From Dimorphilus gyrociliatus (Eukaryota; Animalia; Annelida): a stretch of 64,000 bases of DNA. The DNA lies in the NCBI GenBank assembly GCA_904063045.1, contig CAJFCJ010000006.1:310001-374000 (forward strand). The letters run 5' to 3'. The translations under genes were made by a program, and so were the position numbers. How positions within the stretch are numbered: the first letter of the stretch is position 1; each line of letters starts with the position of its first letter. Below are positions 7,241 to 16,455 of the stretch, piece after piece. Below the pieces are notes generated by a model. The model searched no databases and was not told the origin of the DNA. It saw nothing but the letters and a program-made list of their open reading frames with translations.

Positions 7241-10200
7241 TCAAGCTTTTCGCTTCGTTAACCAAAAAGTTTCCATTTGTCCTTTTCCCTATAGAAAAAA
7301 TGTTTTATTTAATAAATAAAAATCCATAAATTGTAAAATTTCATAATCAAACCTTTATTTCCAAAGTTCCTCGTGGAATTATCATTAAATTATCTAGTTT
7401 AAAGGCTTTTAGCGACTCGGCAGAAGTTGGCGACATTTGAATTTTCCCTGGTTCAGAGGTACTTTCCATTCGTGAGGCAACATTAACAGTATCGCCAAAG
7501 AGACAGTATCTTGGCATTTTAAGACCGACAATACCTGCCATTACAGGCCCTGTATGAATGCCAACTCTTAGAGCAAGATGTTCCTCCTTTCTATGAGGAA
7601 GCTGCATTGTCATGGCAGATTCAAGAAGTTCAACGGATAGTCTTGCAATCTCAACAACATGGGTATCGCAATTTCTTTTCGGTAAACCACTTATCACCAT
7701 ATAGGCATCTCCAATTGTCTCAACTTTATACGCATCAAAGGAACCAATTATTTTATCAAATCGTGAATATAATTCGTTTAATAAAGTAATAACTTGCATG
7801 GGAGTTGAAGATGATGATATCTCTGTAAAACCAACTATATCTGAAAAGTAAATCGTAACAGAATCGTAATATTCAGGTGGTACTGATTGACCACACGACA
7901 GTTTATCAGCTACATCCGGCGGCAGAATTTCGTGGAGAAGTGATCTTTGCTGTTCCATTACCTTTGCCAATTCTTCCGTTCTCTCTTCTACACGTTGTTC
8001 TAATTCTTTTAAATAGTTGTCTACCGCTTCCATCATGCAATCCAAAACTGATTTTCTTGAAGGTGCAGCTCCAGTCAACTCTTTTTTAATTCTACGAAAA
8101 GGTGGCCTTGCTTCTGGATTAGCGTCCCAGCTCGAACATAATATAGAAACGAGTTTTTTGTTCCAGTTGGGATTAATTTTTGGTCTAAGATTTTCATGGA
8201 TGATTAATTCCAATATTTTTTGTGGTGTCTGATCCAACTCCTGATATGGTTCGTCCCTCGTAAAAATTTCAATTAATATTATTGCAAAGCTATAAATGTC
8301 ATTCTGTTTCGTAGGAGTAGTTGATTTATGTAATAGCCTTTCGGGAGACAACCAAAATTTTCTCTTCTCTAAAACCTCTTCGCTAAGCTCTTCTTGTAAT
8401 GGGCTTACTTGATTGTGAGAGACCTGTTTTCCGTGGAAAGTAATCCATTCCCAATCAGATATTTTTACAGACCATTTAGCATCAATGTAGCAACAATGCG
8501 ATGATAGATGTAAGTGAATTATGTCAAGAGAATGGAGATAGGCCATTCCATTTGCAATATCTATTGACATACTATATTTGAAATTGTCATTTAAATTATA
8601 CTTTTCATCTAAAAGAACGTCCGAGAGTGATCCCTTTGAACAATATTCACTAACAAACCAAACTCTTTCGCCTAGATGGCAAACGCCAAAAAACTTTTGA
8701 ATGTTATTGTTTTGAACATTTAGCTTGAGCCACATCAACTGCCGGCAAGCGGATTTTTTCAATTCTTTTACATCTTTTAGTGTACTTGAACGCAAGCAAA
8801 TCATTTGAGTGTCAAGGAAAGCAAGTTTTAAAGTTTTGACATTATTTACACCAGTTGAGTGAGGGGCTGAATAGGTACTGCCCAAAGACGAAGCCTCTAA
8901 AGTGTTTCCGGTAAGTGTTATTTTCTCGTTTGATATGAACCAATCGTTTCTGGACAACGCTCTACTTAGCTGATATTGCTGTACGATTATGTAGGACATC
9001 AAAAGCAAAATAAGGAAGCCAACAACAACACCGGAAACAATGGCAGGTATTCGCCAGACTTGTAAGGACAGATATTCAGAGTTTTTTTGGTCAGCAACTA
9101 ATTCCGACACGGCATTCCCTTCACCACAAAACATTTTATCCAACACAATTTTTTTTACAAGAGCAGCTACTTCTCTATTTAAGGGTGTCATATGTTTGTT
9201 GATGCATTCTCTATGTGCAGCATTATTTGTAGTAAACCACTCTATGTATCGCCATAATTCTACTGCAGGATCGCAGTCCTTAAGGCCTTTCATTCTTACA
9301 ATTAGATATGTATATCCTGCAATAGGATATGAACTTTTACCTCCTGCATTAGATAACGATATGGTCAGTCTTTCATCCATATCCTTGGAAAAATTTGTCA
9401 TTGCTGACTGAACATTCTGATATCTTGCATCTACCCATTCACCGTCTTTATTCCTTAGCTCAGCATATTTTAAGTTTGCTTCTTTTGCGTCAGAAATACT
9501 AAGGTATGATATAGTATAGGGCAAACTTAAAATTAGGCCACTTACTCCCCTATTTCCCTGACCCTTCAAATATACTACGTCTTCTGACCAGTGAGAAGAT
9601 CTAGCAAAAACGCCGTAAGTAGAATTCCACTGCGAACTAAATGATGCTAGTCCACTCGTAAATATTTCAGTCGTTCCAGATTTATCCTTTCGTACAATGA
9701 CTCGAATCTTTTCGTTCGGTAATGAGAAGTTTCTGTTATAGTCTTGTATAAGAGAACTATTCCAGTTCTTGATAGTACCATTAAATATTCCAACAGCTAT
9801 TTCTTGAGTTAGAAATAAGTCACTAACCCCGGGAAGATGGTAGACAATAACAACAGCCCTGTAAAGTAAACGGAGATGTTTAATTAAATAGGAAACTATA
9901 AAGATAGTTACATCTGAGGACATAAACGGCTCTAAGGTTATATCGGAAAACATGTATATAAGGGTTACTCCTCTATTTAAAATGTAATAAATCTAAATGC
10001 AGTCTGTTATAGTGATTTCAAAGAGCTGGTTTTAAAAGTTATCTAGGCATAGAAGATAAAATAAAGATTGATACGTATCTTGATGCAATACTTGACAGAT
10101 TTATTTCTGATACTGCTACTCTGTTAAAAGTTTCATTACAAGGACTTGTATTTGGACATAAAAGTATATCCCTACATTCTTAAATTTCAAATTATCTTTA

Positions 10201-11502
10201 AAGATTTGGAGAGTAATATTTCAAATTCATTTTTGTCGTGAAATATTTTATTACTAACATTGATGAAGAAAGAATGAGCCAATAAAGAGAACTAGTGATA
10301 CAACATCTCTCTGTTACAAATATGTATTATTATTGAAGGGATTTTAATGAATATAATGATATAAGAGGATTTGAAAAAAATGAAGGGAGTTTTTATATTA
10401 GTACGACGTCTTTGATATAAAGAGCTGGAAAAATTAAAAGCAGCAAAGAAAAATTCTTTTTTTCACTGTCTGAAATTATGAAATGAAAAACGAGAAAGCA
10501 TAAATTAAAAGATGATATTGATATACTTTATACCATGTCAAATATCTAATCTCATTGTAATTATACAATTTTGTAGATAGTATACTTTTTATTAAATGTG
10601 AAATTCCATATACCAATTGTGTTAATCATTGATATATTAGTCACGAGAATCCACTGATGCCTAAATTAAAGAAATTAACGCTAAATTCTTTATTATCTTT
10701 CTAAAAATGAAATATTTGATAAATTTTCCTTAGCTTCGAAGAAAGTAATAAAGCTTAGTATAAAAATAGATCCTATTTGGAGGGGTTACTTTTGACAAGG
10801 ACTTAAAAACATTAATATATAAGCAAAATATACATACTATTCGAAAAAGTACATAGGAAGATTAGTTCGATAACATGAAAAATATAATGAAGCAATTCCC
10901 AATATCAAATATTTATGACTAAAACGCTCAATTCTGTTTACTATAGATAATTTGTTTTAATATAATCGGATTGTGTTTTTGTAGACAATATGGTATTATA
11001 GCAAATTAAATGACAGATATATATGATATCTTCGAAAGAATTATCATCAAAAGAATCTTTTTTTAGATACTGGTTTAGCAATTTCTCATGTGGTGAAAAT
11101 GAAATAAGAAAAAATATTTACCCCGCTACTGAAGGTAGCATATGTAAATCAGGGTAGGTTTTATAATCTTCTTCAGTGAGTAGGGAATCAGTTCCTGCGT
11201 AATGAACATAGCTATCTTCTTTACCTTTTATTCTATTTTTTCCGATTCCACTTCCTACGCTTTCATATTGCATATTTAGGGTAACGAATCGAGATCTCTC
11301 CGAGCGAAACATAGTAATCCACGACTAAAGTGTTTCGTAATAAAAAAAAGTAACTTCAAATTGCCAGTATATAAGTAGGAACTCTTAAATTCATTACCTG
11401 ATAAACAAGAGCAGGAAATGTAGCGCCCGCTCCGATAACATTTATGGGTGATACAAACTTTAAAACAGGGAAGAGCCAAAAGAGGAGAGAGAGATACTTC
11501 AT
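7241..11502 (-). CDS. Receptor guanylyl cyclase (953 aa): signal peptide, PstS-like phosphate-binding ectodomain, TM, kinase-homology domain, coiled linker, guanylyl cyclase
   Basis: Exons 11502-11398, 11324-11122, 9858-7353 and 7288-7241 total 2862 nt in frame. PstS motifs: GAGATFP, VGSG, YAGTD, VRKDKSGTT. TM: IPAIVSGVVVGFLILLLMSYIIV. Pseudokinase HLHLSSHCC lacks the HRD Asp. Cyclase motifs: SDIVGFT, KVETIGDAYM, PRYCLFGDTVNVASRMES, GKGQMETFWL. Confidence 0.93.
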
Positions 11503-12191
11503 ACCGTTCTCAACTTTTTTCTCGTAGACGTTTCTATCCCAAGCAATCACGTGACAGACAAACTGTTACCTTTTATGAGGAAGGAGAGCATTATGGGTAA
11601 GCTCGGAAGCTGTTCACCTTTCAGGTTTAGTTTGAAGGACAATTCGGTCTTCAAATAGGTTCTTCATAAATTTGCTTCTTTAAAATCTTGACTTGATAAT
11701 CGCTAAAGGTTTTATTTAAAAGGGAAAAATAACAATAAAAAAAGAAGGAAAATATAGATAATTAAGAAAAAATAAATGTCTAATATAACAAGATCAGTCT
11801 CTTGTTTGTGTTCCAGTAGAATATCTTTACCAGTCGATAATGGTTTATTCATCGCACAAAAGACCATCAGTGTACTGTTAGCGAAAAGGGATATAATACA
11901 TAGAATACAGAGCTACCTTTGATGATTACTATGGATGTACTCTCATATCCAAATTAAGAAAATTTTATTGAATTAGTTCAATTTAAGCTATTCATATATA
12001 CGGATCAAAGATTGTGAATAATAAAATAAAATATATAAAAAATATGATGGCGTTAATTAACTTTTGTAGTTATTGTTTAAATATCCATTTCTTGTGGTCC
12101 TTCCTTATAACGTGCACACTTAAATTATTAATGATGATACGTCGACTAGCGTTTGATAGAAAATAAGTGTATTGTTCTATTTTTTTCTTTA

Positions 12192-15000
12192 TTAAGCAAA
12201 TGGCTCTTTAAGTTTAGTAGATAAAAGCTCGTAGGCTCCAACCTGCGTTTGAATGAAAAAAATGCACTTCAATAAGACGGTATTAATGAGCGATATACAA
12301 AGACATGAAAGATTAATTGAAAATGCGATTACACAAAAATTTACATATCGAAGTGAAAATATTTTTTTGAACAATATGCCAATTTTCGTATAAAAGTTTA
12401 ATAGATATGTTAAGATATGCAGAAAATATGACATGTTAATAGCTTAAATATAATTTATTAATTACTCTCTATTCTACGTTGTTACTTTTAAATAAAACTT
12501 TTAACCTGCTATTGAAAATCTATCAAAGAAAAATTTATTGATTGCATTGGAATATACTTTTAGGAATATAATATGCCGGAAATATCCGTTACCAATTAAC
12601 ATATTTAGTAATCTTATTTATGTGAGATAAATGATCATCAAACATAACAATCTCCTTAGGTACTATAATTTACAAATATCGCCAATATATGCGTCTCTTT
12701 TGTAGATATCTTTTTATATATACTTGTATTTATCTTAAAATATCTTGTCTCTGCGTATTTTACTTGTTACAAAGATTTTAAATAGTTAATTTGGCGGTTT
12801 ATATATTTTATAGGCAAGCATATTTTACAAACCTTCATATTATAGACGGATATTATTCTGTTGCTCGTTATAAATTTTCCAAATTTCGGTTTGGACTGAA
12901 AATATCTCTTGTCGCCATATTTACCATCCGTATCGCCCGCTTAGAAAAATCATGGATTAAAATTCGTATGCTTATAAATATGATAAATAACAAAACACAA
13001 TTTACCTGGTTCGGAGAGGACTATTCCTATGTGAGTTCGATAATTTTTGGGCTCAACATATCCTATGAAAGCTACACAGGCTTCTTTTATTACTGGTTTA
13101 CCTCCTAAATACAAAAATAAATATTCAATCTGTAAAATATATACCGTCTTAAACTACTATTAATGCTGACCATTCTTATTACTGATATTGGCTGTAACTT
13201 TATCTCCGATTGTGAAAAATTTCAAACGCTCTTTATCTGCTCGAATCAATCGAGAGGATAGTGGCGGTGATCGAGCAGGATTAGGTCTAGAACCAGGTGG
13301 AGAGTTTAGTAAACCTAACTGCTCATACGGTGAGTTTGGAAGAGATATTCTTTGAGCATTTGCCCTATGCGGAGCTGATTTAATACGTATTTTCTTGAGT
13401 TTAGCCGTATCCAATTTACTATCACTGGCAGTTTTAGGTCTTGAGCATCGTGCATCTTTTTTATTTTCGTCTGACAATAGAGTTTCTAAAAGACTTTCTG
13501 ATTTTCTATCAGATACGCTGGTCTCGATATAAGTATTTTGGTTGGTTGAGGGTCTGGGCTCTGCGTTTTCGTCTATTTCTTTCAGTAACGACCTTTCAGC
13601 TTGCCCGTTCATTTTCCGTAATAAAGAATCCTTTCCGGCTAAAAGTCGACGTAAAGTGTTAATTTCAAGTTTTGCTCTTTCTAACTCTTCCTGCTGACTA
13701 TTCTGCTCATTAAGATTATTTTCTAATCTCTGTTGACATTTGAATCAATTTTGTTATAATTAACTGATCTACTCTTACCTTAACATTTTCCCTATATTCT
13801 CTATTTGACAAACGAGAATGCTGCAACAACAAGTCCTTATTTTTAGACTCATTTTTTAGTCTTTCTATTTCATTATTCTTTTCTTGGATTTCGTCTTCAA
13901 GAATAGGAATTCTTGCCAGTTTCTTTTTAAAAAAATAAACAAAAGAGAATGTAAATATATTTTTTAAAACAAATGATGAAAACGACGTACTTGATCAATT
14001 TTATCATTTCTAAACAACTCCTCTCTTACCTGAGCTTTTAAGTCTAATATTTTGTAATCTTGATTCTTTAATCGAAGATTAGCCTCCTGTCAAGAATATA
14101 TTTATCGTGTTTAATAATATATATATTACCAGATTAATTGTGGCAATTAACTTTTAATTTTTTCTGGCATGTCTCTAAACTTTTTTTTGTTGATCGCAGT
14201 TCAGCCTCAGAAGCAGATAAAGATATTCTAACGTTAAGACATTAAAAAAAATATTAAATATCAAAAAGGTGCTAATCATTAATTATTGTCCTTTATCCTT
14301 TTAACAGAAAACTACTTACTGTGTATTTTCAAGGTTCTTTTTCAACGAATCTAGTGTTATTTCTAACCTGTCCGTTTCACTTGAGGCTCTATTAGCTGTT
14401 CAATTAGATATACATTAAACCTTATACCATTTCTAAATATCAAAGAAATATATATTAAGTCAATGAATAAGGAATATTTCATGCCTTTTGCTTCAAGTTT
14501 TATAACTTTATCCTCCATTTTTTTATACTCAAACTCCATTTTATCAGTAGATTCAGTTTTTTTCTTGTTATCCGTGCGTAATTTATCATTGTTACTCTCG
14601 GCTCTATTCAATTTAGTTAATAACTCATCCAATTCCAAACGTAATTGTCTTTCACTGGTTTCTAATAACTCAATACAGGATTTTTTCTCTTTCAAGTCTA
14701 ATCGAAGGCGTTCATTTTCATTCTTAACTAAATCTAATTCATTGTCCCTGAATAAAGAAGACTTGAAATAAGTATTATTCAATCTGATTTTCACAGCAAA
14801 CTATTATAACATAAAACGTTATTATCATTTAATTAAAGAAAAATAATAATACTGTTTTTGTAAATCGAATTAAAGATAGTTTTTTACCTAGTACACTTAT
14901 TCTGCTTGTATTTGCTAATAACCTGCTTAGCTAGATTGTTTATAGATGAGTTCAGTTTAAGCCTATTCTCAAATATGTCAGGACGATTTCCGACCGGCAT
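12192..15000 (-). CDS. Coiled-coil protein with C-terminal CAP-Gly domain; true start may lie further upstream
   Basis: Phase-consistent exons from ATG 15000 pass through heptad-rich segments (DNELDLVKNENERLRLDLKEKK..., RLENNLNEQNSQQEELERAKLEINTLRRLL) and a Ser/Pro linker. Exons ending 13170, 13104-13006, 12939-12833 and 12242-12192 give IGDKV...VAFIGYV...IGIVLSEPAGDTDGKYGDKRYFQSKPKFGKFI, a CAP-Gly pattern. Confidence 0.75.
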
Positions 15001-15512
15001 AATAAATCTTATCGTTAAAACTTGTATAGAAAACTATAAATGCCAGTAAGAACACAGGAAAAAGTTATAGCGACATCTCCGCTACGTCGTAAAGTGAAAA
15101 GCTTTAAAAGTATCGAAACGTGAATATATTGAACAAAAGTAAACGTTTCAAGGAGCTAATATGTACACTTTTTATTTTTTATATACTTTTAAATCAATTT
15201 ATGTACTCAGGTTGGTCTCTGAATTATGAAATATGCATATTAATCACTGAGAGGATTACCACTTCTTTCGCTTAGACTACTTTTACATACAATATATAAT
15301 ATATCGGTATATAAAATATGTTAAGAAATAGGAATCAAACAAGTTAGAAGTTGAATTCAGTCTAATAAAAAGAAATCTAGGAAAATATTTGCTAATGGAA
15401 ATGTTAAAGCCGCTTCTTACGAACACATTATTGGCGGATAAATAAGGTTTAGGTCGATAGGTAAGGAAAAAACAAGCTCCTAATACAAGCAAAAGCGCCT
15501 TATAAGTCTTAC

Positions 15513-15789
15513 TTTTCGTCAATTGACTTTATGGCTCGAATAACGTGATCCGGTACGTCTTCTTGTTTCTCTCCAGTAGTTCTATTTACCCAAAAAGTAC
15601 CAAGTTCAGGGCTTTGCATTAAAGACCACTCTTCGTTCTATATTAAAATATATAAATATATCTTACAATGATAAAATATCCTTGATGAAAGTTCTCTTTA
15701 TCTTATTTTTAAAGAAATAATATGCATCTTTTCCTTACAACTGATGTTTTTTTCTTTTTAATAAAGGTCACAGATTTTCTTCTGTTCAT
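15513..15789 (-). CDS. Two exons encoding a basic N-terminus and a WW-like motif; either a small gene or the 5' end of the CAP-Gly gene
   Basis: 15789-15739 (MNRRKSVTFIKKKKTSV|gtaagg) joins in phase 0 to 15637-15513 (NEEWSLMQSPELGTFWVNRTTGEKQEDVPDHVIRAIKSIDE, ending AA|gtaaga). The W-x10-FWVN-x-TTGE-x-Q-x-x-x-P spacing resembles WW domains. Confidence 0.5.
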
Positions 15790-16455
15790 TCTGTGTTGTT
15801 TTTCTTATAAATTTCTGGCAACCATTTAACAATAAAGGATCGAATATAAATAAATCGCATTGATTGGATTTATAATCGATCAATATTGATATCAAGAGCA
15901 TAAACTTGTACGTACTTCGGTATTAATTATAATTCTTCAAGATAATACCAATAAGGGATTAAAGCTGATTAAAATCAGATGAAAGAGATTCTCATATTTT
16001 TATAAAGTGGTATTAGAAATCCTAAACTCTCATTACCTCGAATTTTAATGTCGATTGCAAACTATTTTTTGATGTTGTTCTTGACACCGAGCGTTTATAT
16101 TTTGCCATGTTAAAATCCTATTGGCGTTCAATCAAGCGGCCGACGCATAGATTTTCAACAAACTAACATTCGTTGAGTGATACCGCGCTTTTCATTGTAT
16201 GTTGTCCTATGGTATTGTGAATCATTGAAATCAGTATTTACTTTATTGAGCTGATAATAAAGGAACGTATTTGTCTTGCAGTCGTAACGACTACTACTTA
16301 AGTTATTCTCGTTAATTTACACTCGACTTTAAAGGCTTATGAATTACAAGCTCTTCCGGAAGATATTTATTAACACTAAAATAACGATAACCAAGTGCCA
16401 TTAATATTCAACATATTCAATAACAATATAATAACTAATTCAACATATACAATAA

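What the first reader, a model, noticed from the sequence alone, without database searches (positions are those of the whole stretch)
7241..11502. Receptor guanylyl cyclase with an intact PstS phosphate-binding ectodomain: candidate animal extracellular-phosphate receptor
Seen: a signal peptide, then a domain with GAGATFP, VGSG, YAGTD and VRKDKSGTT, one TM helix, a pseudokinase lacking the HRD Asp, and a cyclase with the GTP-specifying residues (E in KVETIG, C in RYCLFG). Established: these ectodomain motifs are the hallmarks of the bacterial ABC-transporter phosphate-binding protein PstS, whose phosphate-binding-site residues in E. coli are T10, F11, S38, D56, R135, D137, S139, G140 and T141. 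All have counterparts here: T28, F29, S60, D81, R159, D161, S163, G164, T165. Characterised animal receptor GCs (NPR-A/B, GC-C, retinal GCs) use a different ANF-receptor-type ectodomain. Two introns interrupt the PstS domain, so this is an integrated eukaryotic gene and not bacterial contamination. Inference: cleft closure on inorganic phosphate could drive cGMP synthesis, giving a direct Pi-sensing receptor. I know of no functional characterisation of such a protein, although similar architectures may exist unannotated in invertebrate proteomes.
Basis: partly seen in the sequence, partly recalled or inferred. Interest (0 to 1): 0.92.

Follow-up and report, generated by a model that had tools for sequence, protein, structure and literature searches.

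The report
Receptor guanylyl cyclase with PstS phosphate-binding ectodomain
A small marine worm has a real, expressed cell-surface enzyme that makes the messenger cGMP, and its outer part is an intact copy of the bacterial phosphate clamp PstS, so it and its many unrecognised relatives in molluscs, worms and tardigrades are strong but untested candidates for a direct animal sensor of phosphate outside the cell.

Summary
Window 11502-7241 (minus strand) is a four-exon gene of the annelid Dimorphilus gyrociliatus. All three introns are confirmed by a spliced transcript contig. The 953-residue protein has a signal peptide, a PstS domain, one membrane helix, a dead kinase-like domain and a guanylyl cyclase.

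The predicted ectodomain (pLDDT 96.8) superposes on E. coli PstS (TM 0.83-0.86). All 49 best structural matches are phosphate-binding proteins.

The gene belongs to a large family that I did not find described in the searchable literature. Members occur in annelids, molluscs, nemerteans, priapulids and tardigrades. Databases name them "ANP receptor-like" or "retinal GC-like". The family forms one clade by its ectodomain and one split by its intracellular part, and it keeps the phosphate site.

Related PstS domains sit on other membrane receptors in protists and fungi. The nearest bacterial PstS proteins are 42-45% identical.

Ten full-text literature searches found no description. Phosphate binding and phosphate-dependent cGMP output remain untested.

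The scan had already noted the same kind of gene on other DNA of this genome (s1-080197, s1-081362, s1-080487).

The parts
11398..11502 (-). Exon 1 (aa 1-35). It holds the signal peptide (about aa 1-19, 11446-11502), the first strand of the PstS domain and the GAGATFP loop (11413-11433) with phosphate ligands T28 and F29. This exon is missing from the public annotation DgyrCDS4228.
   Evidence: joint 11324/11398; annotated protein starts at M40; (same exon in a related species).
11325..11397 (-). Intron 1 (73 nt, GT-AG), inside the PstS domain.
   Evidence: splice sites; spliced out in the transcript contig.
11122..11324 (-). Exon 2 (aa 36-102 plus two bases of codon 103). It holds phosphate ligands S60 (11250-11252) and D81 (11187-11189).
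   Evidence: (TIGR00975 PstS, 20.1 bits on this exon alone).
9859..11121 (-). Intron 2 (1263 nt, GT-AG), inside the PstS domain. A minor contig reads from exon 3 into its 3' end (9844-10136).
9132..9858 (-). The exon 3 part of the PstS domain (aa 103 to about 345). It includes the R159-x-D161-x-S163-G164-T165 phosphate loop (9672-9692) and the conserved Cys298 (9273-9275). The conserved Cys347 lies just downstream at 9126-9128.
8982..9050 (-). Single transmembrane helix (aa 373-395). It is preceded by a juxtamembrane helix that the model predicts with high confidence.
   Evidence: hydropathy.
8052..8834 (-). Kinase-homology domain (about aa 445-705). It is catalytically dead: H551-L552-H553 (8508-8516) replaces H-R-D. 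It aligns with the HGNLKSSNC segment of NPR-A.
7887..8051 (-). Coiled-coil linker ('signalling helix'), aa 706-760.
   Evidence: HNOBA C-terminal helix, 19.2 bits; continuous alignment with NPR-A.
7353..7880 (-). Class III cyclase catalytic domain, exon 3 part (aa 763-938). Metal-binding Asp D776 and D820, GTP-specifying E816 and C888, and catalytic N895 and R899 are all present.
7289..7352 (-). Intron 3 (64 nt, GT-AG).
7241..7288 (-). Exon 4 (aa 939-953, the GKGQMETFWL end of the cyclase domain, plus the stop codon).

Best explanation
This is a single-pass receptor guanylyl cyclase of the annelid Dimorphilus gyrociliatus. Its ligand-binding ectodomain is a complete PstS-type phosphate-binding 'Venus flytrap' rather than the usual ANF-receptor domain.

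Shown:
- the gene, its splicing and its expression
- the PstS fold
- all nine phosphate-contacting residues, and their conservation across a large protostome family
- an NPR-A-like intracellular module with a dead kinase-like domain
- a cyclase domain with all catalytic and GTP-selecting residues

Inferred:
- Orthophosphate outside the cell is trapped between the two lobes, as in bacterial PstS.
- Lobe closure moves the C-terminal juxtamembrane helix. That helix is probably pinned to the domain by the family-specific Cys298-Cys347 pair.
- In a receptor dimer the movement passes through the membrane helix, kinase-homology domain and coiled coil, as in NPR-A, and changes cGMP synthesis.

The direction of the response (activation or inhibition) is not known. 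Nor is the biological role: an external chemosensory cue or internal phosphate homeostasis.
For: Gene and expression:
- Four GT-AG exons.
- All three joints appear in a spliced public contig.
- A related species has the same exon structure.

PstS identity:
- Pfam PBP_like_2.
- The ectodomain of the Owenia family member scores best against solved Y. pestis and E. coli PstS at E about 3e-32, against 1e-7 for DING proteins.
- TIGR00975 PstS equivalog (cut-off 205 bits): Owenia 207 and Haliotis 214.5 pass. The N-truncated Dimorphilus protein scores 195.6.
- On a bacterial PstS profile built here, the full Dimorphilus ectodomain scores the same as Owenia (290.5 against 289.8 bits) and 30 bits above the truncated form.
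- It is 42-45% identical over about 300-337 residues to Chloroflexi-type bacterial PstS, and 28.7% identical to E. coli PstS.

Binding site:
- All nine ligands map one to one.
- Among cyclase-type family members covering each position: R135 68/68, D137 59/68, S139 59/68, G140 64/67, T or S at 141 64/68, S38 14/15, D56 13/18 plus 4 Glu.

Fold:
- AF2 pLDDT 96.8, pTM 0.92.
- Foldseek against PDB: E. coli PstS 2abh TM 0.83/0.86, rmsd 2.4 A. The top 49 hits are all phosphate-binding proteins.

Output module:
- It aligns end to end with full-length NPR-A structures at E 3e-112, with identical YKVETIGDAYMV and MPRYCLFGDTVN motifs.

Extracellular location:
- Signal peptide, five N-glycosylation sequons, and Cys298 and Cys347 conserved in 71/73 and 70/73 members.

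Precedent:
- PstS already acts as a sensing module for phosphate chemotaxis through the chemoreceptor CtpL in Pseudomonas aeruginosa (PMC8050422).
Against: - There is no binding or activity data for any member of this family.
- The AF2 model covers aa 40-370 only.
- The truncated Dimorphilus ectodomain falls 9 bits short of the TIGR00975 cut-off. That the full one passes is inferred only from a proxy profile.
- How closure of a type II binding protein would be coupled to a single helix is not established for any guanylyl cyclase.
- Some receptor cyclases are regulated from inside the cell or by temperature. An intact-looking ectodomain does not prove ligand gating.
- A minority of family members have substitutions at D137, S139 or D56. 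Not all need share the ligand.
- The closest bacterial relative examined is an orphan pstS gene, not part of a pstSCAB operon. Its own ligand is also only inferred.
Confidence: 0.6

Rival explanations
1. The ectodomain binds a different small anion or phosphorylated compound, such as arsenate, sulfate, pyrophosphate, phosphite or a phosphoester. The receptor would then report that molecule rather than orthophosphate.
For: PBP-fold pockets can be retuned by few changes. Some family members vary at the D137, S139 and D56 equivalents. The family has many paralogues per species, which in other chemoreceptor families goes with ligand diversification.
Against: In this gene all nine phosphate ligands are unchanged. 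They include D81, the equivalent of E. coli D56. By established knowledge of PstS, that residue accepts a hydrogen bond from protonated phosphate and excludes sulfate. All 49 best structural matches are orthophosphate binders. The closed PstS pocket buries the ion completely and leaves no room for an ester substituent (established knowledge of E. coli PstS structures).
Confidence: 0.12
2. The PstS domain is a structural or dimerisation scaffold that no longer signals through ligand binding. The cyclase would be controlled from inside the cell or by physical cues, as in retinal cyclases and thermosensory cyclases.
For: Some animal receptor cyclases have no known extracellular ligand (established knowledge). 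No functional data exist for this family.
Against: A scaffold role does not explain near-invariant retention of the phosphate-contacting side chains across phyla, for example R135 in 68 of 68. It also does not explain 42-45% identity to bacterial PstS, almost as high as between animal phyla.
Confidence: 0.15
3. The gene is an artefact: bacterial contamination or a chimeric assembly joining a bacterial pstS to an animal cyclase gene.
For: The ectodomain is unusually similar to bacterial PstS. The eukaryotic 'DING' phosphate-binding proteins have a history of contested origin.
Against: - Two spliceosomal introns lie inside the PstS domain and are removed in a single transcript contig that runs through to the cyclase.
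- GC content is about 30-36%, like the rest of the window.
- A related species has the same exon structure.
- The same architecture appears in chromosome-scale assemblies of many animals.
- The ectodomain and intracellular trees agree.
Confidence: 0.01

Closest known systems
PstS, the periplasmic phosphate-binding protein of the bacterial PstSCAB ABC importer (E. coli 1IXH/2ABH; NCBIfam TIGR00975; Pfam PF12849)
   Same: Same fold (TM 0.83-0.86) and the same nine phosphate-contacting residues. It is 28.7% identical to E. coli PstS and 42-45% identical to Chloroflexi-type PstS. Family members pass the TIGR00975 equivalog cut-off.
   Different: The animal domain is not a free soluble protein that docks on PstCA. 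It is covalently fused through a helix to a membrane anchor and a cGMP-producing module. It is made by an animal from a gene with introns. It carries N-glycosylation sequons and a conserved Cys pair that E. coli PstS lacks.
ANF-receptor-type receptor guanylyl cyclases (NPR-A/B, GC-C, GC-G, Gyc76C, sea-urchin sperm receptors, C. elegans GCYs)
   Same: The same membrane helix, kinase-homology domain, coiled coil and cyclase module. It aligns end to end with NPR-A at E 3e-112 and is 41-44% identical to NPR, GC-G and Gyc76C-like proteins. By established knowledge, some C. elegans GCYs already act as direct sensors of inorganic ions and pH, so an ion-sensing receptor cyclase has precedent.
   Different: The ectodomain is a type II binding protein (PF12849), not the type I ANF_receptor domain (PF01094). 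On the tree of the intracellular part, a single branch (SH-aLRT 100) separates all 24 PstS-type proteins from all 20 ANF-type proteins sampled.
PstS-like domains on other eukaryotic membrane receptors (PBP_like_2 + 7tm_3 class C GPCR-like proteins and others)
   Same: The same ectodomain clade. Examples: Calcarisporiella PBP_like_2 + 7tm_3; Rigifila 2x PBP_like_2 + ANF_receptor + 7TM; Chromosphaera 4x PBP_like_2 + TRP-like; Fabomonas 2x PBP_like_2 + kinase + cyclase. A PBP_like_2 class C GPCR in the chytrid Spizellomyces was listed in passing in PMC3251606.
   Different: The output modules and domain numbers differ, and none is functionally characterised. The animal cyclase-type proteins form their own clade (SH-aLRT 99).
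DING proteins / human phosphate-binding protein (HPBP)
   Same: These are PstS-superfamily phosphate binders reported from eukaryotic sources.
   Different: They are much more distant: E about 1e-7 against 3e-32 and TM 0.57-0.67 against 0.83-0.86. They are soluble proteins without a clear eukaryotic gene. This is not a DING protein.
PstS-CtpL phosphate chemotaxis in Pseudomonas aeruginosa, and SBP-dependent sensor proteins in general
   Same: Phosphate-loaded PstS is used as the sensing element of a transmembrane signalling protein (PMC8050422).
   Different: There the binding protein is a separate polypeptide that docks on the receptor. Here it is fused to the receptor, and the output is cGMP in an animal.
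Venus kinase receptors (VKR) of invertebrates
   Same: The same design idea: a Venus-flytrap ectodomain, one membrane helix and an intracellular enzyme, activated by small molecules (PMC4026697, listed).
   Different: The VKR flytrap is of the class C GPCR/ANF type and the output is a tyrosine kinase. There is no relation to PstS.

Membership tests
PstS family (PF12849 PBP_like_2 / NCBIfam TIGR00975 equivalog) | Profile match above the curated cut-off | tested here: met
   Pfam PBP_like_2 scores 59.4 bits against a cut-off of 27 on exon 3 alone. For TIGR00975 (cut-off 205), the Owenia (207) and Haliotis (214.5) members pass. The N-truncated Dimorphilus protein scores 195.6. The full spliced ectodomain could not be handed to that tool. 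On a bacterial PstS profile built here it scores the same as Owenia and 30 bits above the truncated form. The stricter equivalog test is therefore only inferred for this gene.
PstS family (PF12849 PBP_like_2 / NCBIfam TIGR00975 equivalog) | Two-lobed type II periplasmic-binding-protein fold of PstS | tested here: met
   AF2 pLDDT 96.8. Foldseek gives TM 0.83/0.86 and rmsd 2.4 A to 2abh, and the top 49 PDB hits are all phosphate-binding proteins.
PstS family (PF12849 PBP_like_2 / NCBIfam TIGR00975 equivalog) | Complete set of phosphate-contacting residues (E. coli T10, F11, S38, D56, R135, D137, S139, G140, T141) | tested here: met
   T28, F29, S60, D81, R159, D161, S163, G164 and T165. They are conserved across the animal family.
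PstS family (PF12849 PBP_like_2 / NCBIfam TIGR00975 equivalog) | Works as the soluble substrate-binding partner of a PstCAB ABC importer | tested here: not met
   The domain is fused in one reading frame to a membrane helix, kinase-homology domain and cyclase. By homology it is a PstS domain, but it is not a transporter subunit.
PstS family (PF12849 PBP_like_2 / NCBIfam TIGR00975 equivalog) | High-affinity, selective binding of orthophosphate | not testable with these tools
   This needs ITC or MST on recombinant ectodomain.
Receptor (membrane) guanylyl cyclases | Single membrane helix followed by a kinase-homology domain lacking catalytic residues | tested here: met
   Hydrophobic helix at aa 373-395. 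PK_Tyr_Ser-Thr 4e-35. H-L-H replaces H-R-D and aligns with HGN of NPR-A.
Receptor (membrane) guanylyl cyclases | Coiled-coil linker and class III cyclase domain with metal-binding Asp, catalytic Asn/Arg and the GTP-selecting Glu/Cys pair | tested here: met
   Guanylate_cyc 9e-60. D776, D820, E816, C888, N895 and R899 are present. The motifs are identical to NPR-A. That Glu/Cys specify GTP is established knowledge, not tested here.
Receptor (membrane) guanylyl cyclases | ANF_receptor (PF01094) ligand-binding ectodomain, as in all characterised animal members | tested here: not met
   There is no PF01094 hit, and PBP_like_2 is found instead. The ANF-type cyclases of the same search carry PF01094. 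It is a receptor guanylyl cyclase of a distinct subfamily.
Receptor (membrane) guanylyl cyclases | Makes cGMP | not testable with these tools
   This needs an enzyme assay.
DING proteins | Close sequence and structural similarity to DING/HPBP proteins | tested here: not met
   E about 1e-7 against 3e-32 for PstS. TM 0.57-0.67 against 0.83-0.86.

The most novel reading that the evidence does not exclude
PstS-type ectodomains are an ancient, eukaryote-wide module for sensing phosphate outside the cell, and they have gone unnoticed. In protostome animals the module is wired to cGMP through this receptor-cyclase family. That would make these proteins the first dedicated, direct extracellular phosphate receptors known in animals. 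In protists and fungi the same module is wired to class C GPCR-like, TRP-like and kinase-cyclase outputs.
Probability: 0.4. Interest if true: 0.9.

Novelty: new variant of a known kind. Interest (0 to 1): 0.8.

Why it matters
How animal cells detect phosphate outside the cell is a long-standing open question. In mammals only indirect or multi-purpose candidates are discussed (PiT1/PiT2, CaSR, FGFR1c), and the mechanisms are called poorly understood (PMC8199323).

This gene offers a receptor whose ligand pocket can be read directly from sequence. It is the best-understood phosphate-binding site in biology, joined to a well-understood second-messenger output. The hypothesis is therefore testable with standard assays and clean binding-site controls.

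The finding also shows three wider things:
- A whole subfamily of receptor guanylyl cyclases in molluscs, annelids, nemerteans, priapulids and tardigrades is mislabelled in databases as natriuretic-peptide or retinal cyclase-like.
- The public Dimorphilus gene model lacks the signal peptide and part of the binding site.
- Related PstS sensor domains sit on several other receptor types across eukaryotes.

If confirmed, the ectodomain-cyclase pair could also serve as a genetically encoded phosphate-to-cGMP sensor.

Tried and rejected
- A first AF2 run on a 9-sequence alignment gave pLDDT 42 and was discarded. A 97-sequence alignment fixed it.
- Contamination or a chimeric assembly is rejected by the spliced transcript and by the conserved exon structure in a related species.
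- DING-protein membership is rejected.
- A recent bacterial transfer into annelids is rejected. The animal domains form one clade nested among protist receptor domains. The deeper origin, whether an ancient transfer from a Chloroflexi-like PstS or vertical descent, is not resolved.
- I looked for a pstSCAB context around the closest bacterial relative (P0168). It is an orphan pstS gene, so this was uninformative.
- Exon 1 alone against NCBIfam gave no hit because it is too short. The spliced full ectodomain could not be given by reference to the profile or structure tools.
- There is no paralogue inside this window (tblastn).
- A sequence look-up in the scan's own notes was blank.
- Ten literature searches found no paper on a PstS-type receptor cyclase. 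Subscription-only papers are not covered.
- The oyster kinome paper notes eight oyster-specific receptor cyclases but does not mention their ectodomains. Whether these are the PstS type was not checked.
Full report
**1. What is in the sequence**

The window is AT-rich, at about 30-36% GC around the gene. On the minus strand between 11502 and 7241 I built a four-exon model:
- exon 1: 11502-11398
- exon 2: 11324-11122
- exon 3: 9858-7353
- exon 4: 7288-7241

All introns are GT-AG. The coding sequence is 2862 nt and the product is 953 aa.

A contig of public run X1 joins the exons at exactly these positions (7288/7353, 9858/11122, 11324/11398). It shows no mismatch and is colinear across the in-frame stop upstream of the ATG at 11502. 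The splicing and the start codon therefore have transcript support.

The organism is the annelid Dimorphilus gyrociliatus. The public protein DgyrCDS4228 (914 aa, P0001) is identical to the model but starts at Met40. It lacks exon 1, which means it lacks the signal peptide and the GAGATFP loop.

A genomic contig of a related species (L004; P0002 is 73% identical over exon 3) has the same four-exon layout. Its exon 1 encodes a signal peptide and NGAGATFPALLYQ.

**2. Domain content**

Pfam on exon 3 alone gives PBP_like_2 (6e-16), PK_Tyr_Ser-Thr (4e-35) and Guanylate_cyc (9e-60). There is one hydrophobic helix at aa 373-395.

The intracellular half aligns end to end with the full-length cryo-EM chains of NPR-A (E 3e-112). 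In that alignment:
- H551-L552-H553 sits where kinases have H-R-D, aligned with HGN of NPR-A.
- The cyclase motifs YKVETIGDAYMV and MPRYCLFGDTVN are identical to NPR-A.

The metal-binding Asp (D776, D820), the GTP-selecting Glu/Cys (E816, C888) and the catalytic Asn/Arg (N895, R899) are all present. The roles of these residues are established knowledge.

**3. The ectodomain is a true PstS**

Solved structures by sequence: the complete ectodomain of the Owenia family member finds Y. pestis and E. coli PstS best, at E about 3e-32. DING proteins score only about 1e-7.

NCBI's PstS equivalog model TIGR00975 has a cut-off of 205 bits:

| Ectodomain | Score (bits) |
|---|---|
| Owenia | 207 |
| Haliotis | 214.5 |
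| Dimorphilus, N-truncated annotated form | 195.6 |

On a bacterial PstS profile that I built, the full Dimorphilus ectodomain scores 290.5 bits. That equals Owenia (289.8) and is 30 bits above the truncated form. The full domain would very probably pass the NCBI cut-off, but this is a proxy.

BLASTP gives 42-45% identity over about 300-337 residues to PstS proteins of Chloroflexi/Anaerolineae type (E about 1e-82), and 28.7% to E. coli PstS. That is almost as high as the 40-48% identity to family members of other animal phyla.

I fetched E. coli K-12 pstS and aligned it.

An AF2 model of aa 40-370, built on a 97-sequence alignment (A2), has pLDDT 96.8 and pTM 0.92. Foldseek against the PDB gives E. 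coli PstS 2abh at TM 0.83/0.86 and rmsd 2.4 A. The best 49 hits are all phosphate-binding proteins, and DING proteins reach only TM 0.57-0.67.

The ectodomain also has five N-glycosylation sequons. Two cysteines, C298 and C347, are conserved in 71/73 and 70/73 cyclase-type relatives. This fits an extracellular domain with a disulfide that ties the C-terminal linker to the fold. The disulfide is inferred.

**4. It is one member of a large, unrecognised family**

A profile of nine ectodomains searched against 1.84 billion cluster representatives found 8786 hits, 682 of them below 1e-30. Of the 150 best representatives, about 70 have the layout PstS - membrane helix - kinase-homology domain, with or without a cyclase. 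Many are cut gene models or short contigs.

Named members:

| Group | Taxa |
|---|---|
| Molluscs | Haliotis (three species), Mercenaria, Argopecten, Mya, Ostrea, Sinanodonta |
| Nemerteans | Lineus, Tubulanus |
| Annelids | Owenia, Paralvinella |
| Priapulids | Priapulus (two genes) |
| Tardigrades | Paramacrobiotus (two genes) |

Their automatic names hide the ectodomain: 'atrial natriuretic peptide receptor-like', 'retinal guanylyl cyclase 2-like', 'guanylate cyclase 2G-like' and 'gcy-like'.

The phosphate ligands are kept in the cyclase-type members that cover each position:

| E. coli position | Conservation |
|---|---|
| R135 | 68/68 |
| D137 | 59/68 (5 Glu) |
| S139 | 59/68 |
| G140 | 64/67 |
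| T141 | T or S in 64/68 |
| S38 | 14/15 |
| D56 | 13/18 (4 Glu) |
| T10 | S or T in 10/11 |

Most models lack the N-terminal exons, as the Dimorphilus annotation does.

**5. Origin**

In a quick maximum-likelihood tree of 99 ectodomains rooted on E. coli PstS:
- All 41 cyclase-type domains, plus three short mollusc forms, make one clade (SH-aLRT 99).
- That clade is nested in a eukaryotic clade of 65 rows (SH-aLRT 99) together with protist and fungal receptor domains.
- The Chloroflexi-type bacterial PstS proteins lie next to that eukaryotic clade.

The protist and fungal relatives are:

| Organism | Group | Architecture |
|---|---|---|
| Chromosphaera | ichthyosporean | 4x PBP_like_2 + Ephrin_rec_like + TRP-like |
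| Entosiphon | euglenid | multiple PBP_like_2 domains |
| Rigifila | | 2x PBP_like_2 + ANF_receptor + 7TM |
| Calcarisporiella | fungus | PBP_like_2 + 7tm_3 |
| Fabomonas | | 2x PBP_like_2 + kinase + cyclase |
| Mesostigma | | multiple PBP_like_2 domains |
| Palpitomonas | | PBP_like_2 domain |

On a tree of the intracellular part (kinase-homology plus cyclase; 24 PstS-type and 20 ANF-type rows), a single branch with SH-aLRT 100 separates the two ectodomain types. This fits one fusion or domain-swap event and a distinct cyclase subfamily.

Caveats: both are quick trees with SH-aLRT support only. The ANF-type sample is limited to the nearest hits. The root of the second tree is unknown.

**6. 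How it most likely works**

Shown: the architecture, the fold, the intact and conserved phosphate site, the complete cyclase active site and expression.

Inferred: orthophosphate outside the cell is clamped between the two lobes as in bacterial PstS. Closure shifts the juxtamembrane helix, which the model predicts with high confidence at its residues 314-330. In a dimer the change is relayed through the kinase-homology domain and coiled coil to the cyclase pair, as in NPR-A.

The sign of the response and the physiological role are open. The role could be an external food or biofilm cue, or internal homeostasis.

PstS is already used as a sensor element in bacteria: phosphate-loaded PstS activates the chemoreceptor CtpL (PMC8050422). 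By established knowledge, C. elegans receptor cyclases sense inorganic ions and pH.

I put about 0.75 on phosphate binding and about 0.6 on phosphate-controlled cGMP output.

The rivals are a different anion or phospho-compound (0.12), a ligand-independent scaffold (0.15) and an artefact (0.01).

**7. Novelty**

Ten full-text searches of about 8.4 million papers and preprints found no description of a PstS-type receptor cyclase in animals.

The nearest mentions are:
- a PBP_like_2 class C GPCR in a chytrid, listed in passing (PMC3251606)
- an oyster kinome paper that noticed an expanded oyster-specific cyclase group without looking at ectodomains (PMC4883820)

Subscription-only literature was not covered. 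Domain databases already hold the Pfam hits, precomputed, for these proteins. The architecture is therefore visible but not interpreted.

The scan itself had noted the same kind of gene on other pieces of this genome (s1-080197, followed up with the same reading; s1-081362; s1-080487). Dimorphilus therefore has several paralogues. I did not examine those loci.

**8. Verdict**

It is a new variant of a known kind: a receptor guanylyl cyclase with a different, fully legible ligand domain. It bears directly on the open question of extracellular phosphate sensing in animals (PMC8199323).

Noticed in passing
window 11398-11502 (exon 1): The public gene model DgyrCDS4228 starts at Met40 (11312). It misses exon 1, which encodes the signal peptide and the phosphate ligands T28 and F29. 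Most database members of the family are truncated at the N-terminus in the same way (62 of 73 lack these positions).
   Followed up: yes
window 11503-12244 and 12239-16194: The transcript contig of the cyclase gene runs on colinearly upstream to 12244. Other contigs of a multi-exon minus-strand gene (exons up to 16194) splice into an acceptor at about 12239. The upstream gene's last exon or 3' UTR therefore abuts or overlaps the cyclase gene's 5' region, and the assembler may have merged two transcripts. One intron of that upstream gene (14395-14485) has GC-AG ends.
   Followed up: partly
window 9844-10136: A low-depth contig (4.5 against 47.5) reads from exon 3 into intron 2. This could be unspliced RNA or a minor alternative 5' end. 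An in-frame ATG lies at 9953, and starting there would give a receptor without the first third of the PstS domain.
   Followed up: no
P0014, P0099, P0126, P0111, P0013 (protist and fungal proteins, not in the window): PstS-like domains of the same clade are fused to other outputs. Examples: 7tm_3 class C GPCR (Calcarisporiella and an unnamed protein); ANF_receptor + 7TM (Rigifila); Ephrin_rec_like + TRP-like membrane domain with 4-5 tandem PstS domains (Chromosphaera); and two PstS domains + kinase + cyclase (Fabomonas). This is a possible eukaryote-wide repertoire of phosphate-sensing receptors.
   Followed up: partly
P0164, P0019, P0025 (Haliotis, Aplysia, Nucella): Short mollusc proteins (436-545 aa) have the PstS domain and a membrane helix but no kinase-homology or cyclase part. 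They fall inside the cyclase-type clade. They may be truncated gene models, or they may be real membrane-anchored phosphate binders or decoys.
   Followed up: no
L002, L003 (hydrothermal-vent metagenome contigs): The closest bacterial PstS relative examined (P0168, 44% identical to the Dimorphilus ectodomain) is encoded alone. No pstC, pstA or pstB genes lie within 5 kb.
   Followed up: partly
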